This document shows positions 43,101 to 49,100 of a stretch of 64,000 nucleotides of DNA, one piece after another. The notes beneath the pieces were generated by a model, which worked only from the letters and a program-made list of their open reading frames with translations, did not search any database and was not told the DNA's origin. Every line of letters begins with the position of its first letter. Positions within the stretch are counted from its first letter, which is position 1. Made by a program: the position numbers and the translations under genes. The stretch comes from Isurus oxyrinchus (lineage: Eukaryota): contig JANJGN010000017.1 of assembly GCA_026770705.1 (NCBI GenBank), positions 103,230,001 to 103,294,000 on the forward strand. Direction: 5' to 3'.

Positions 43101-46100
43101 TGGCAAAGGGAGTGGAGAATGCACAAGAGGCCAGAAATGAAGGAACATGGAGTTCTTAGAAGGTTTTCGGGCTGGATGGGGTTAGAGGTAGAAAGCATCA
43201 AGGCGATGAGAGATCTAAACATGAGGATGAAAACTTTAAATTCAAGACAGTGGGAGGAGTGAAGTATTGGAATAAAGATGGGTAAAAGGCAAAAGAAAAA
43301 AATCTGCACTACTGTGTTGCTTCACAGCAATAATGAAGATGCCCGGCAGTGAAACTTTGGTGCTACCAAACATCCGTGTGGGTGAGCAGTAGCTGCAAAA
43401 GGTCCTTCAGACATTGCTTAAAGAAAACTTAAACTGAATGACAATATACTTTGAATGCCCCTGCCAACTATATCCTTTTTGTTTAACAGGCCTGCTCTAT
43501 TATGAAGACCTCATCGTACCAGTTACAAAGGCAGAGGCGGATTTGATCAGACAAATTGTTGAAAGAGCTGTACACACATTTTTTCCTGCTGCAGTGATAA
43601 CATTAACTGGTGGCTTTCGAAGGTTAGAGCTCTGTAGCATTCCCTTATACCATTTAATTCTGTTAACTTCAGCTAATATCTGTAAAAGCCTGAAACTACC
43701 TGAGAAGAGAACAGAAAAAGGAACCTTTTTATTATTGTGAAACCCAAGCAAGAGGCCAAGGCCCTTCGATTAAGATTTTAAAGAATAGAAAGGACGAGGT
43801 GAATCAAGAACTGTAATTGGATTGTACATGTTAAATTGCAAGTAGTGGCATTGATGGATTTGGATTTCTTGTTATAATGGTCAATTTTCTCCATCAGGAG
43901 CAAAATGGTTGAAAGTGCATATATTCTCAACTGACTAAGCAACACTGGAAGGATTTCTCTCTTGCTCAAATACCTCATCTGAGACTGGGTTTGTAGTTGA
44001 GTGTTTTAATTGAGAGTCAGACATTGTCATGTAGCAATCAAAAGGCAGAATACTGTGGATGCTGGAAATCTGAATTGAAAACAGAAAATGCTGTTTTAGT
44101 CAATAGTCCACAGGTTGGGCAACCCAGTGGAGAGAGAAATAATGTTAATGCTTCAGGTGGATGATCTTTCATCAGAACTGGGAAAAGTTAGAGATGTTAG
44201 AAAATTAGGTTTTGAGCAAGTGGTGGGTGGGACAAGGACAAAGGAAGGTCTGTGATAGGGTGGAGGATGAGAGATTGAATGGCAGAATAATTAGTCTAAG
44301 AGCTCAAAGGGAATGGTAATGGGTAAGAAAAAGAGAAACAAAAACACGTGCCTCAAGCAGGTATGCTGCTGTCTTGAAAGCAAATATAAGGGAAAACCAA
44401 AACATGCAATGAAAAAGCAACAATGGGGGAACAAAGTTTACAGTCTCGAGTTATTTAACCTTAACTGAGTCTCGAAGACTGTAAAGTATCCAATCGAAAG
44501 ATAAGGTGTTGTTCCTCAAATTGACGGTGAGTTTCACTGGAACAGTGCAGCAGGTCAAGGACAGAGATGTCAGTGTGAGAACAAGGTGGAGAATTAAAAT
44601 GACAGGCCACTGGAAGCTCACCAAACAGATCTTCCAGTTTCCTCCCTTTTACGTTTTCCCAAGAGACTAACCAATTCTTCCATGTTACCCTGCAGCACTC
44701 CTCAATCACCCGCAACATCCTGTTCCCCCCCATCTCACAGTACCTTTCCATGCAAATGCAGGGGATGTAAAACCTGCCCTTTTATCACTAATCTATTCCC
44801 CTTCCAAGGGCCCTAACACGCATTTCAGCTGAAGCAGCAATTTACGTGTACTTCTTTTAATTTAACTTAATGTATTTGCTGCTCACAATTTGGTTTCCTC
44901 TACATGGAAAAACCAAACGCAAGTTGGAAAGCACACAAAGTTGTGTCTCAGGATACTCCTCATATTTCTCAATCCTGCAGCTTGTGATATGGTTAACCAC
45001 ATCATCCTCTTCCAACACCACTTCTTTCTCCATCTGAATGGAGCTGCCTTTGCTCGCTCTTATTCGTAGTATAAAATGAGATATCAGAAATATTCAAAGC
45101 TTTGGGACCCTTTGCCTATTAGGAGCAAGTTCTGAACCTCACTAGCCATAAATGTGACTAACACATATTACATATTACATGAGTTTTGAGTTACTTCCAA
45201 GCTGCTCTGTTAAGTCCATAAGCTTGACCCTGAGCTTCCGGTGGCTTGTCATTTTAATTCCCCACTTTGCTATCATGCTGACATCCTTGTCCTGTTGCAT
45301 TGTTCCAGTGAAGCTAAACGTAAGCTTGAGGAGCAGCGCCTACCTTTCAATTAAGCCCTTTGAATGCCTGCTGGACTCAACATTGAGCTCAGCAATTTTA
45401 GACCGTAAACCTGTTCGCCCATTTTGTTTCCTCTTTGCATGATTTGGTTTTTCTCTTATTTTGCTTTCAGATGGTGGCACACCAGTTCTTGACACATCTT
45501 TTGTTTCTTTGTGTCTTTCCATGACTCATCACCATTCTGTCACCAGCTTGTCAACAACAGCTTTTGGGTGAGGACCAAACACTGCACTTGATGAACTCGA
45601 TCCTAAAGAAATGCTTTGGAAAATACCACCATTAATGCTCCAGTATTTCTCCAGTACCTTCATACAAAGAGATGTTCACACTTCTTTTGAAATACTTCTT
45701 TTAAGTGGCTTGTGTTCACTCAGAGGACATTCTGTTCTTCAGAGGGAAGGAGTATGGCCATGATGTTGACTTCCTCATAACTCTTCGTGAAGAAGGCAAG
45801 GAAGAGGGCCTTATTTACCAAGTGATTAGTTGGATGGCTGCCCAGGTATGATTTGGACATTATTAATTCTGGCAATGCGCAAGAGATACTTTAGACTTTT
45901 GAATCTATTCAACTTGGAAGTAACTCAAAACTCATGTAATATGTGTTAGTCACATTTATGGCTAGTGAGGTTCAGAACTTGCTCCTAATAGGCAAAGGAT
46001 CCCAAAGCGTTGAATATTTTTGATATCTCATTTTATACTATGAATAAGAGCAAGCAAAGAAAGAAGTGGTGTTGGAAGAGGATGATGTGGTTAACCATAT

Positions 46101-49100
46101 CACAAGCTGCAGGATTGAGAAATATGAGGAGTATCCTGAGAGACAACCTTGTTTGCTTTCCTTTTACACAAATTCTGTGTGTTCTGAACTGCTAAATAGA
46201 AAATACTGTCTGACCCAACCCCGCTGCAATTGGGTTTCTATATACCCTTTGCTTCTTAGCTGTTCATCTGCATGGCAGCACCAGGTCACGTGAGTATTTG
46301 GAACTTAATGATGTGATCATCGGGAAGCCAATTAATCTGCTGTCAGAATATTCCCCGAACTATGTTGATCTTAAATGAAAGTATAGGCTTTTCCCAACAC
46401 GTCGGCCATCACAATATGGATAGAATTTTAACTGAGAAAAGATGAGTCTAGGTCAGGTAGAAGTTTAAAGTTTTAAAAATGCAGTTCCCGATTCCAATCC
46501 ACCCACTTAAGGCTCTAACTGAAAAGCGGGAGGCAACCAATCTGTTTTAAGGAAGTGGGTGGCACTTTAAATATGACAGATATGACAAGGATGCTGAAAG
46601 CCTAATTGTCATTCAGCTTTTCAACTTCAAATGTGGCCGGTCGGGTTTCCTGAGAGATGAATGCTTTTATACCTGCATGGTGGAGCCTTGGTGCCTGCTT
46701 GAGGAACCACTATAATTGGGGGTCAGCCTGCCCCGAACCTTCCCATGTGGGCTTCACTCGTAGCCTATTCCTGTTGCAAAGTCCAGGCACTTGTTTTTAA
46801 TTCGCTTTGTCCATGACTCTTTTTAACTTAAAAATTGGTTTTGAAATTGAAAAGATTTTAAGAAGAAACGGTCCTTTAATATATTGACAAGAGTTTTGTA
46901 ATTTTTGTTGCTTAATCTAGTTCTTTTTAACAGCAAGTTCCTTATATAATGAATACCTACCAACTTGCAAGACATTTCTCATGTAGCCTGCCTTTAAAAC
47001 AGGAGACAAAAACTATGTGGGATAAGTCAATGCTCTTGAAAGAAGAGAGATGTCTAAGCTTTTCATCTTGCACTCATCAGGACATTCGCAAGAATACCAA
47101 TATAAGGGGAAAACAATAATGTATGCTCTGAGGAGAATGCTGAGTAGCTGGCAAATGGTGTTGCCATGAAGAATGTACCACTGATGGTGGCTGACAATTA
47201 ACTGCCAAGTATTGTTTGAAATTTAAACCAGGCAGCTTTACCCTGATTGGTCAAGGTGTTGCCCTGAGGAATGAGTTAGTGAGTGGCTGTCACTTATTTT
47301 ATTTAGCTGAAACAGGCACAATATACATGTTCTTTTTGTCTACTGGACTTGTGTAAGAGTCATGAGCAACCACGTTGGGTTTGTCCTCGTGCTTTACTAC
47401 ACCCGAATGTGTATGGGCTGTCCAAGGCACACAAAAGTCATGTCCCTCTACACCCCATTTTATCTATGATCGGTTCTGCACAACATGAATTGGCCAAATG
47501 ATTGGATGAATTGTTACAACCAGTTTTGACCAAGTTTTCCACATAGATGATGAAAGACTCCTTCACATTTGCGAGAGCCATACAGGACTTGCATATCAAT
47601 AGCAATGCTGTATCCATGAGCAGAACCTAGTGGGGAGGTGTTTAAATTTGTACAAGCTCTTCCAAAGTTTGAGGAAAAATATATTGAAGCATTCTTCATT
47701 TCATTTGAGAAGATAGCTAAACAATGGCCACAGGAAAGCTGGATGTTATTGTTAGTGTAAATTGGTGGGTAGAGTTCATGAGGTATATGCCTCGTTGTCT
47801 CAAGAAGTATTAGTGAATTATGTTGTAGTGAAAAAGGCCATTTTGAGTGCATATGAGTTGGTTCCTGAAGCATATAGGCAGAAATTTAGGAATATGAGAA
47901 AACAGCCTGGGCAAACTTATATTGAGTTTGAGAGAGTAAAACAAAGTAATTTTGACCGGTGGATACAGGCATTAAAAATAGAGACAACGTATGCAGCTTT
48001 TAGGCAAGTAATTCTTTTAGAAGAATTTAAAGACTCAATTCCTTCGGTAGTGAGAACTCATGTGGAGGAACAAAGGGTTAAAACAGTAAGACATGAAGCA
48101 GAGATAGCTGATGATTATGAGTTAGTGCTAGAGCCAAACCTTTTTTCAGTCATGCTTTTAAATCCGAAAAGGATAGAAAGTGGGAAGGTGAAAGGAAGGT
48201 GGGTAGTCAGGGAAGAAAGGAGTAGCTGGAAATTCCCAGCAAGTTTTTTTCTCAGAATAGAAAAGAATATGCTGAGATTGGGAGTAGCATTTGAAAAATT
48301 GAGGTGTTTTTGTTGTAATAAAGTGGGGCATACAAAGTCAGTGTGTTGGAAATTGCAGGGGAAATCTGTTGCAGTTATTGGGATGCAGAAAAGATCTGGA
48401 AGTAAAAGTACTGCGGGTTCTAAGGTTCAGGCACAGGAAAAACCAGTAGTTTGCGTACAAGTAAAATAGGGAGAATCAGTGATGGGTAAGTAAGTGAGAA
48501 TAGGTTCACAGTTTACCCAAGAGTATTCTGAGGGGCAAGTTGTAGAAATGTTTAAATACTTTGTGTGTGAAGGGAAAATCTTGATACCTTGCAATCTGGA
48601 AACAATCCAGGATGCTTTTCTGTAACACCTCTGTTGAAACCACTTTCCACATGTACAGGGTGGAGTAAATAAAGATGTTAAAATTTTAAGAGACACAGGG
48701 GCTAGTCGATCCTTAATGTTGTGGGATAGTGATATTTGTTCAGAGGGAGTATTGCAGGAGTAGGTGATAATAAGTGGGGTTCATGGAGATGTTAAACCTA
48801 TTCCATTGAGGAAGATAAATTTAAATAGCAAATGGAAAACAGGTGAAGTTATTGTTGGAGTTGTGGAAGAATTTCCCATTGCAGGGGTTCAGTTTATCCT
48901 GGGTAATGATATAACTGGATCATAGATTTGGGTGATGCCTAGGGTAGTTGAGCAGCCTGTAGAAATGGTTTCAACAGCGGTGTTACAGAGAGAGCATCCT
49001 GGATTGTTTCCAGATTGTGTGGTAACGAGATCACAGGCGCACAGGTTGAAACAAGAAAAACAGGAAGGACAGGCAGTTCGAACGCAAGAAAAAAGTGTTG

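What the first reader, a model, noticed from the sequence alone, without database searches (positions are those of the whole stretch)
44926..46161. Young ~250-bp inverted repeat encloses the catalytic exon of the polymerase
Seen: 44926-45201 and 45913-46161 are reverse complements (about 8 substitutions, one ~20-nt and one 7-nt indel). The 711-nt loop holds only exon 8 (GHDVDF), whose donor is 67 nt from the right arm. The arms match no other repeat in the window. Skipping the 103-nt exon joins AG to GGTATGA, giving Arg-Val-stop (53718-53720), an NMD-type premature stop. Established: flanking inverted repeats promote exon skipping, back-splicing and ADAR editing. Inference: an RNA-structure switch that could limit the dose of a mutagenic polymerase, or yield an exon-8 circRNA.
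Basis: partly seen in the sequence, partly recalled or inferred. Interest (0 to 1): 0.75.

Follow-up and report, generated by a model that had tools for sequence, protein, structure and literature searches.

The report
Inverted duplication flanking a polymerase exon
A 250-base piece of intron was copied backwards to the other side of one exon of a shark TdT/Pol mu-type DNA polymerase gene; it is real and shared by two related organisms, but it looks like an ordinary neutral rearrangement, with no sign so far that it controls splicing.

Summary
44926-45201 and 45913-46161 are reverse complements with 8 substitutions in 249 aligned positions, a 20-nt indel and a 7-nt indel. They enclose a 711-nt loop whose only exon is the 103-nt GHDVDF exon, 45743-45845. 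Skipping that exon would give Arg-Val-stop at 53718-53720.

The arms are not a transposon pair.
- The left arm is a secondary insertion into an old Penelope-like repeat. A paralogue at 29.2-29.7 kb, and other genomic copies, lack it.
- It has no target-site duplication, terminal repeats or tail.
- The inner part of the arms is at single-copy level in DNA contigs of two organisms.

I read it as a local templated inverted duplication of intron 8 sequence into intron 7.

A second organism about 1.6% diverged has both arms with the same arm-specific 20-nt difference. Several arm differences are lineage-specific and uncompensated.

The pre-mRNA is predicted to form a duplex of about 243 pairs. However, spliced RNA contigs of both organisms contain exon 8 at the depth of exon 7. 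These contigs cannot show rare isoforms, so skipping, back-splicing and editing remain untested. A regulatory switch is unsupported. The finding is real and ordinary, of low to moderate interest.

The parts
44926..45201 (.). Left arm of the inverted repeat, the inserted copy, in intron 7. It carries a 20-nt extra stretch (about 45028-45047) and a 7-nt tandem copy (45163-45176).
   Evidence: The paralogous repeat copy lacks it. Other genomic copies of the host repeat join 44904/44906 to 45205 with 35-36 other letters between (table 5c).
45913..46161 (.). Right arm of the inverted repeat, the likely source copy in its native context, in intron 8. It starts 67 nt after the exon 8 donor.
   Evidence: A contig of X1 runs 46112-46265 with 0 differences across its outer end. 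Dispersed-repeat copies overlap 46140-46299 across that end (records 6, 7, 31).
45202..45912 (+). The 711-nt loop between the arms. It holds the rest of the old Penelope-like fragment (45202-45520), single-copy intron sequence and exon 8.
   Evidence: bins 45600-45929 at single-copy depth.
45743..45845 (+). Exon 8, 103 nt, encoding (R)[13 protein letters not shown]..., which carries the catalytic DVD motif. It is not a multiple of 3.
   Evidence: splice sites. (matches Pol mu chains at 26.5 bits and TdT at 16.1 bits). (RNA contigs at depth 15.6 and 20.2).
43490..43622 (+). Exon 7, which ends ...GGFR + AG (phase 2).
   Evidence: RNA contig pieces lie at 43487-43620 and 43487-43622 (records 17 and 9).
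53714..54046 (+). Exon 9. It starts GGTATGA, and TGA at 53718-53720 comes into frame if exon 8 is skipped.
44640..44925 (+). Old Penelope-like (GIY-YIG-type) repeat fragment that hosts the left arm. It continues at 45202-45480.
   Evidence: It is collinear with the reverse complement of 29195-29649. Pfam GIY-YIG hits the paralogue's 180-aa frame only weakly (E 0.051, below cut-off).
44322..44620 (.). Older inverted partner of 45231-45520 (72-84% alike), both within intron 7. It is a competing pairing partner in the pre-mRNA.
29191..29730 (-). Paralogous Penelope-like copy that serves as the 'empty site'. It has 20 nt where the 44-kb copy has the left arm.

Best explanation
The feature is a local inverted duplication of the templated-insertion type. 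About 250 bp of intron 8, starting 67 nt downstream of exon 8, was copied in reverse orientation into a break inside an old Penelope-like repeat in intron 7 of a TdT/Pol mu-type family X polymerase gene. The copy replaced 20 bp of the target. This happened before two closely related organisms separated, and since then both arms have drifted like the surrounding intron.

In the pre-mRNA the arms can form a duplex of about 243 base pairs that loops out the 103-nt catalytic exon. By analogy with inverted Alu pairs, this may cause some back-splicing, exon skipping with nonsense-mediated decay, or ADAR editing as by-products. The main mRNA nevertheless includes exon 8.

Shown: the repeat, its insertion into the older repeat, its low copy number, its presence in a second organism, and exon 8 in spliced contigs. 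Inferred: the mechanism of origin, the direction right arm to left arm, neutrality, and any effect on RNA.
For: Repeat and geometry.

Insertion into an older repeat: 44640-44925 plus 45202-45480 aligns end to end with the reverse complement of the copy at 29.2-29.65 kb. That copy has 20 nt where the arm lies. Contigs of other genomic copies join 44904/44906 to 45205 with 35-36 letters between (table 5c).

No transposon signature: the flanks share only 4-nt words, which is the commonest outcome for random 20-mers of this window (2061 of 5000 trials). The two ends of an arm share only a 4-nt inverted word, and there is no A or T tail. There are 0 tRNA genes, 0 Rfam matches in 43000-48000, and 0 Pfam hits for the 5 reading-frame pieces of the arms and right flank that I tested.

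Copy number at 80% likeness (table 2): the inner arm bins are at single-copy level. In X9, 45050-45159 reads 22.9 and 45930-46039 reads 19.2, against 16-18 for the unique flank. In X1 the same bins read 0 and 58.2, against 32-36. Neighbouring dispersed repeats reach 10^3 to 10^6.

Native context of the right arm: an X1 contig spans 46112-46265 without a difference. Other copies of the adjacent dispersed repeat begin about 20 nt inside the arm's outer end (records 6, 7, 31).

Second organism: X9 and X18 contigs carry the left arm with its 20-nt stretch (record 28, 0 gaps), the right arm without it (record 30, 0 gaps), and the left arm's two junctions (records 27 and 14).

Drift: X9 differs from the window at 45 of 2862 laid letters (1.6%; records 25-30 and 32). 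Records 28 and 30, which lie inside the arms, differ at 6 of 340. Flank records 25, 26, 29 and 32 differ at 32 of 2108.

RNA: the X19 contig of 2242 nt and the X18 contig of 1170 nt touch the stretch only at exon 7. Exon 8 is covered at 15.6 in X19 (the same figure as exon 7) and at 20.2 in X18 (exon 7: 21.9). The intron bin before it reads 0 in X19 and 2 in X18.
Against: Direction and mechanism are inferred from one event. No outgroup without the left arm was seen, because both organisms have it.

The outer 100 nt or so of both arms shows summed contig depth of about 490-510 in X1 and 255-300 in X9, about 15 times single copy. Part of the arm therefore resembles a low-copy dispersed sequence, and I could not read those contigs.

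In X1, probably the source sample, the arms are not resolved. One 236-nt contig (record 5, depth 49) mixes letters of both arms, and no contig was laid on 45050-45159.

The inner junction of the right arm is bridged by only 30-33 letters (records 4 and 29), which is at the tool's 31-letter limit.

Neutrality rests on few sites, and table 3 is incomplete (236 rows not shown).

All RNA evidence is from assembled contigs, which drop rare isoforms. The exon 7 to exon 8 joint itself is not among the 15 joints listed (416 not shown).
Confidence: 0.7

Rival explanations
1. RNA-structure switch. Pairing of the arms is used by the cell to loop out the catalytic exon. This would give a frame-shifted transcript that is degraded, or a 103-nt exon 8 circle, and so set the dose of the polymerase.
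For: The geometry is right. The arms flank one exon that is not a multiple of 3, and the stop falls 7 nt into exon 9. The predicted duplex is very stable: net -320 kcal/mol, with 243 arm-to-arm pairs in the fold of 44300-46190. The pair is retained in a second organism. Inverted repeats can shift an exon from constitutive to alternative (PMC2533698, abstract) and promote circles (PMC8516420, abstract). The X18 contig ends exactly at the last base of exon 7 (record 9), which means a branch in the assembly graph at that point.
Against: Both RNA runs show exon 8 in spliced transcripts at the depth of exon 7. The X18 branch is explained by unspliced RNA or DNA in that run, since intron contigs at depth 2.4-5.3 (records 13-16) are present. 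Retention in an organism only 1.6% diverged is expected without selection. The arm differences are unpaired changes (6 mismatches and 2 G-U among the 8), with no compensating change seen. An older inverted pair inside intron 7 (net -166 kcal/mol) is transcribed first and is interleaved with the arms. PMC8516420 (abstract) argues that most such circles are by-products. Other first-reader notes report similar exon-bracketing repeats elsewhere in this genome, so the geometry may be common.
Confidence: 0.07
2. Two independent insertions, in opposite orientation, of a young low-copy mobile element such as a short non-autonomous element.
For: The left arm is clearly an insertion into another repeat. 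The outer 100 nt or so of the arms has about 15 times single-copy summed depth in both DNA runs, so part of it is repeated elsewhere. The genome is full of young repeats.
Against: The inner 170 nt or so of the arms is at single-copy level at 80% likeness in both organisms. There is no target-site duplication, no terminal inverted repeat and no tail. There is no tRNA-like head and no Rfam match. The left insertion removed 20 nt of its target. The right arm's outer end falls inside an adjacent dispersed repeat instead of ending at its own boundary (records 7 and 31). No third copy exists in the window.
Confidence: 0.12
3. Assembly artefact: a false inverted duplication made by the assembler.
For: In the probable source sample X1 the arms collapse into one mixed contig, and the middle of the left arm has no contig (record 5 and bin 45050-45159).
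Against: Contigs from a different organism label and different studies (X9, X18) carry the left arm with both its junctions. They also carry arm-specific states: the 20-nt stretch is present in the left arm and absent from the right (records 27, 28, 30, 14). The X1 contigs across the left-outer and right-outer junctions have 0 differences (records 3 and 6).
Confidence: 0.02

Closest known systems
Inverted Alu pairs in primate introns that base-pair in pre-mRNA and change splicing of a nearby exon (Lev-Maor et al. 2008, PMC2533698; abstract read)
   Same: Two reverse-complementary intronic sequences of about 250-300 nt lie close to an exon. A long duplex is predicted. The expected consequences are alternative splicing and ADAR editing.
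   Different: Here the arms are not members of a repeat family but a one-off local duplication. They lie on either side of the exon, whereas in the tested case of that paper both Alus lay in the upstream intron. No editing or alternative splicing was seen here, because only contigs were available.
Reverse-complementary repeats flanking back-spliced exons, the route to circRNA (Gruhl et al. 2021, PMC8516420; abstract read)
   Same: A young, highly similar reverse-complementary pair lies in the two introns that flank an exon of a conserved gene.
   Different: No back-splice junction was observed. The exon is a single one of 103 nt. The pair is not made of transposons. That paper argues such circles are mostly by-products, which fits my reading.
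Templated insertions and short-range template switches that create local inverted copies (PMC7954356, PMC7025897, PMC11724301; search listing and first lines of abstracts only)
   Same: A nearby sequence is copied in reverse orientation into a new site about 0.7 kb away. The junctions have 0-2 nt of shared letters, there is no target-site duplication, and a small piece of the target is lost.
   Different: This is a germline event fixed in two shark lineages. At about 250 nt it is longer than the very short events of the yeast study. The mechanism is inferred from the junctions only.
Penelope-like elements with inverted-terminus insertions (recalled; also noted by other readers of this genome, s1-898471 and s1-900962)
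   Same: The older pair 44322-44620 / 45231-45520 and the GIY-YIG-like frame fit such an element. It is the host of the left arm.
   Different: The young arms themselves are unrelated to it. No hammerhead ribozyme was found in 43000-48000. The GIY-YIG match is below Pfam's cut-off.

Membership tests
Exon-flanking intronic inverted repeat (IRAlu-like, circRNA- or skipping-promoting) | Reverse-complementary sequences in the upstream and downstream introns of the same exon | tested here: met
   The arms are in intron 7 and intron 8 around exon 8.
Exon-flanking intronic inverted repeat (IRAlu-like, circRNA- or skipping-promoting) | Stable pairing of the arms in the pre-mRNA | tested here: met
   Prediction only. 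The MFE of 44900-46190 is -608.6 kcal/mol with a continuous stem. There are 243 arm-to-arm pairs in the 1891-nt fold, and the net is -320 kcal/mol. No structure probing was done.
Exon-flanking intronic inverted repeat (IRAlu-like, circRNA- or skipping-promoting) | Back-splice junction or exon-skipped isoform observed | tested here: inconclusive
   One search used contigs only. Exon 8 is present in spliced contigs of X19 and X18. No back-splice joint is among the 15 joints listed (416 not shown).
Exon-flanking intronic inverted repeat (IRAlu-like, circRNA- or skipping-promoting) | A-to-I editing clusters in the arms | tested here: inconclusive
   The right-arm bins (45930-46149) have RNA depth 0 in both RNA runs. 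The left arm has depth 0 in X19 and 2-2.8 in X18. The one difference seen there (45098 A>T) is also in that organism's DNA run X9.
Mobile element pair (SINE or MITE type) | Many copies of the whole unit in the genome | tested here: not met
   The inner arm bins are at single-copy depth at 80% likeness in X9 (22.9, 19.2) and X1 (0, 58.2). The outer 100 nt or so is about 15 times single copy. No other copy is in the window.
Mobile element pair (SINE or MITE type) | Target-site duplication, terminal inverted repeats or a tail, and a tRNA-like head | tested here: not met
   (4-nt shared words only, the chance level). (0 tRNAs). (0 Rfam matches).
Templated insertion or local inverted duplication | Recipient site known without the insert; junctions with little or no shared sequence and loss of a few target bases | tested here: met
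   The paralogue at 29.2-29.65 kb and other genomic copies lack the arm. 20 nt of the target are replaced. GG is shared at the left junction and the right junction is blunt (table 5c).
Templated insertion or local inverted duplication | Orthologous locus without the insert in an outgroup (polarity) | not testable with these tools
   Both organisms reached through the look-up of sequencing runs have both arms.
TdT / Pol mu clade of family X polymerases | Sequence match of the exons to solved TdT and Pol mu structures, including the GHDVDF exon | tested here: met
   7 of 7 exons tested match both. TdT is best in 4 (57.6, 55, 22.8, 32.5 bits) and Pol mu is best in 3 (54.9, 37.9, 26.5 bits). Which of the two it is stays unresolved.
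Penelope-like element (host repeat) | GIY-YIG endonuclease domain | tested here: inconclusive
   Pfam PF01541 gives E 0.051 and 14.3 bits against a cut-off of 22.6 on the 180-aa frame 29191-29730(-).

The most novel reading that the evidence does not exclude
The duplex is a real, used switch. Whether exon 8, which carries the catalytic aspartates, is spliced in or looped out would depend on how well a cell unwinds or edits the 243-pair stem. Looping out would give a transcript destroyed by nonsense-mediated decay or a 103-nt circle. In this way the activity of an error-prone end-joining polymerase would be set per cell type in these sharks.
Probability: 0.05. Interest if true: 0.6.

Novelty: new member of a known kind. 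Interest (0 to 1): 0.25.

Why it matters
If the arms do pair in vivo, this would be a clean natural test of how a single, non-transposon inverted repeat affects splicing. It has known age and known direction of origin, and the exon's loss is easy to score because it shifts the frame and removes the catalytic motif. As it stands, it is one more example showing that intronic inverted repeats arise by accident and persist. It also warns against reading function from geometry alone.

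Tried and rejected
Led nowhere:
- Rfam on 43000-48000 at E up to 1 gave 0 matches. ARAGORN on the whole window gave 0 genes. So there is no tRNA-like head and no hammerhead.
- Pfam on 5 reading-frame pieces of the arms and the right flank gave 0 hits. Exon pieces 7, 8 and 9 gave 0 Pfam hits because they are too short.
- The search of earlier findings by place around the finding returned nothing.
- Naming the polymerase failed. Per-exon PDB scores split 4 to 3 between TdT and Pol mu. 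In one search the top 6 rows for exon 8 are designed pentatricopeptide repeats with no stretch passing on its own, and I disregard them.
- The joints table lists 15 joints, all between dispersed repeats, with 416 not shown. The exon 7-8 joint is therefore inferred from piece ends and equal depth and was not read directly.

Not possible:
- Raw reads were not available. All four runs are contigs, so depth, rare isoforms, editing levels and strand cannot be read.
- I opened no supplementary files. Supplements of PMC2533698 and PMC8516420 might hold distance and length rules that bear on how likely a 103-nt exon is to circularise.

Considered and rejected: transposon pair, assembly artefact, coding sequence in the arms, and a link between the arms and the Penelope-like host (see the rival explanations).

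Full report
**Observation.**
- The repeat finder reports three collinear inverted segments of 104, 126 and 35 nt at 96-97%.
- The alignment of 44900-45230 with the reverse complement of 45885-46190 shows homology from 44926 to 45201 and from 46161 down to 45913.
- It has 8 substitutions in 249 aligned positions.
- A 20-nt stretch (about 45028-45047, flanked by CTTT on each side) and a 7-nt tandem copy (45163-45176) are present only in the left arm.
- blastn scores the pair at E = 6e-100 and 1e-81.
- Neither arm matches anything else in the window beyond chance words.
- Only 3 inverted pairs of 80 nt or more lie within 5 kb of each other in the 64 kb, and the other two are 68-72% alike.

**Gene context.** The exons lie on the + strand.
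- Exon 7 is 43490-43622 and ends ...CGAAG|gt.
- Exon 8 is 45743-45845 (103 nt) and encodes the GHDVDF motif.
- Exon 9 is 53714-54046 and starts GGTATGA.

I searched the exons one by one against solved structures and did not make a joined model. All 7 exons tested match both TdT and Pol mu chains, with TdT best in 4 and Pol mu best in 3. I therefore call the gene a TdT/Pol mu-type family X polymerase and leave the choice open. That the DVD motif holds catalytic aspartates is recalled knowledge of the family.

**Origin.** The left arm sits inside an older repeat.
- The stretch 44640-44925 plus 45202-45480 aligns end to end with the reverse complement of a copy at 29195-29649. Where the 44-kb copy has the arm, the 29-kb copy has 20 nt.
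- The 29-kb copy has a 180-aa open frame with a weak GIY-YIG match (E 0.051, below cut-off).
- The 44-kb copy has an older inverted partner (44322-44620 against 45231-45520, 72-84%).
- This fits a Penelope-like element. That name rests on recall and on other readers' unchecked notes for this genome.
- Contigs of further genomic copies of this repeat also pass from 44904/44906 to 45205 with 35-36 other letters in between (table 5c). The arm is therefore an insertion that replaced about 20 nt of its target.
- At the left junction two letters (GG) could come from either side. The right junction is blunt.
- There is no target-site duplication, no terminal inverted repeat and no tail. The flanks share 4-nt words, the commonest result for random 20-mers of this window (2061 of 5000).

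**Copy number.** I laid Logan contigs of four runs on 43400-46699 at 80% likeness. X1 is DNA of organism A and may be the source sample. X9 is DNA of organism B. X19 and X18 are probable RNA of A and B.

| Region | X1 summed depth | X9 summed depth |
|---|---|---|
| Dispersed repeats in the stretch | 10^3 to 10^6 | 10^3 to 10^5 |
| Inner left arm, 45050-45159 | 0 | 22.9 |
| Inner right arm, 45930-46039 | 58.2 | 19.2 |
| Unique flank | 32-36 | 16-18 |
| Outer 100 nt or so of both arms | about 490-510 | 255-300 |

- Part of the unit therefore resembles a low-copy dispersed sequence.
- Copies of the repeat to the right of the right arm begin about 20 nt inside the arm (records 7, 31). An X1 contig runs 46112-46265 without a difference (record 6).
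- The right arm is thus continuous with its surroundings, while the left arm is cut out of them. I infer that the right arm is the source and the left arm the copy.
- In X1 the arms are not resolved. One 236-nt contig (record 5, depth 49) carries left-arm letters at 45999 and 46009 and 7 extra letters while lying on the right arm. This looks like two near-identical copies merged by the assembler.

**Second organism and rate.**
- X9 and X18 (organism B) have the left arm with its 20-nt stretch (record 28, 44975-45154, 0 gaps).
- They have the right arm without it (record 30, 45953-46112, 0 gaps).
- They have the left-outer junction (record 27) and the left-inner junction (record 14).
- The right-inner junction is bridged by only 30-33 letters (record 29).
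- The duplication is therefore real and older than the split of A and B.
- X9 differs from the window at 45 of 2862 letters over records 25-30 and 32. I left out record 31, which is another copy of a dispersed repeat with 29 differences in 155 letters.
- Records 28 and 30, inside the arms, differ at 6 of 340. Flank records 25, 26, 29 and 32 differ at 32 of 2108.
- Of the 8 arm differences in the window, organism B has the right-arm state in its left arm at 44934, 44939 and 45066. It has the left-arm state in its right arm at 45999, and a third letter at 45098.
- B also has its own changes at 45983 and 46050.
- At least 4 of the 8 differences therefore arose after the split, and none is matched by a change in the partner arm. 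Gene conversion in B is an alternative for some of these.
- Table 3 is incomplete (236 rows not shown; for example, 3 of the 4 differences of record 30 are listed).

**RNA.**
- The fold of 44900-46190 pairs the arms along their whole length (MFE -608.6 kcal/mol).
- In a fold of 44300-46190, 243 arm-to-arm pairs form and the older pair forms none. The net pairing energy is -320 kcal/mol for the arms against -166 for the older pair.
- The older pair lies wholly in intron 7, is transcribed first and is interleaved with the young arms, so it could compete during transcription. This is an inference.
- X19 has a 2242-nt contig, and X18 a 1170-nt contig, that touch the stretch only at exon 7 (records 17, 9). 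They are therefore spliced RNA.
- Exon 8 is covered at 15.6 in X19, the same per-contig figure as exon 7. It is covered at 20.2 in X18, against 21.9 for exon 7.
- The bin depths fit the exon's edges: 11.2 and 3.82 in X19, and 14.5 and 4.95 in X18. The intron bin before it reads 0 in X19 and 2 in X18.
- The main transcript thus includes exon 8 in both organisms.
- The X18 contig ends at the last base of exon 7, which shows a branch there. Intron contigs at depth 2.4-5.3 in that run (records 13-16) are enough to explain it.
- No RNA contig lies on the right-arm bins (45930-46149).
- The only difference seen on the left arm in RNA (45098 A>T, X18) is also in that organism's DNA.
- Contigs cannot show rare isoforms, so skipping, circles and editing are untested rather than absent.

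**Reading.** The best explanation is an accidental local inverted duplication: a templated insertion at a break, or a template switch. It was fixed before the two organisms split and has been drifting since. It may produce minor splicing by-products. The rivals are a functional switch (0.07), two insertions of a low-copy element (0.12) and an artefact (0.02).

**Comparison with the known.** It works like inverted Alu pairs (PMC2533698, abstract read) and like the reverse-complementary repeats that flank circRNA exons (PMC8516420, abstract read; that paper argues most circles are by-products of young repeats). It differs in not being built from transposons. Its origin resembles templated insertions and short-range template switches (PMC7954356, PMC7025897, PMC11724301; listing and first lines only). 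Other first-reader notes report similar exon-bracketing inverted repeats elsewhere in this genome (unchecked).

**Verdict.** Interest is 0.25.

Noticed in passing
window 43950-44280: A very high-copy dispersed repeat in intron 7. Summed contig depth reaches 1,016,073 in X1 and 203,420 in X9, with hundreds of loose ends sharing one consensus. Weaker copies lie at 3355-3444, 23552-23687, 38487-38627 and 50359-50396. The family is not named.
   Followed up: partly
window 29191-29730 (-) and 44322-45520: Penelope-like copies. One has a 180-aa open frame with a CxxC...[16 protein letters not shown]-type GIY-YIG region (Pfam E 0.051, below cut-off). The other has an inverted partial copy at its upstream side. 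No hammerhead was found by Rfam in 43000-48000.
   Followed up: partly
window 11-1503 and 62515-64000: Two direct copies, 92% alike over 1.5 kb, of a retroelement lie at the two ends of the window. Both have reverse-transcriptase frames on the minus strand (RVT_1, E 7.7e-33 and 7.2e-18).
   Followed up: partly
window 12783-13004 (-): An exon of a sulfatase gene lies on the opposite strand, upstream of the polymerase gene (Pfam Sulfatase, E 1.2e-09). The neighbour gene was not identified further.
   Followed up: partly
window 53714-54046: Exon 9 is one 333-nt exon. About 36 residues (query 43-78) between the two blocks that align to mouse TdT have no counterpart there. This is a longer loop than in the solved structures.
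   Followed up: no
window 45785: This is a synonymous site in exon 8. The window and X1 have T. X9, X18 and also X19 (same organism label as the window) have C. It is probably a polymorphism or an individual allele.
   Followed up: no
window 28325-28979: Long open frames made of a [14 protein letters not shown]-like tandem repeat lie just beside the 29-kb Penelope-like copy.
   Followed up: no
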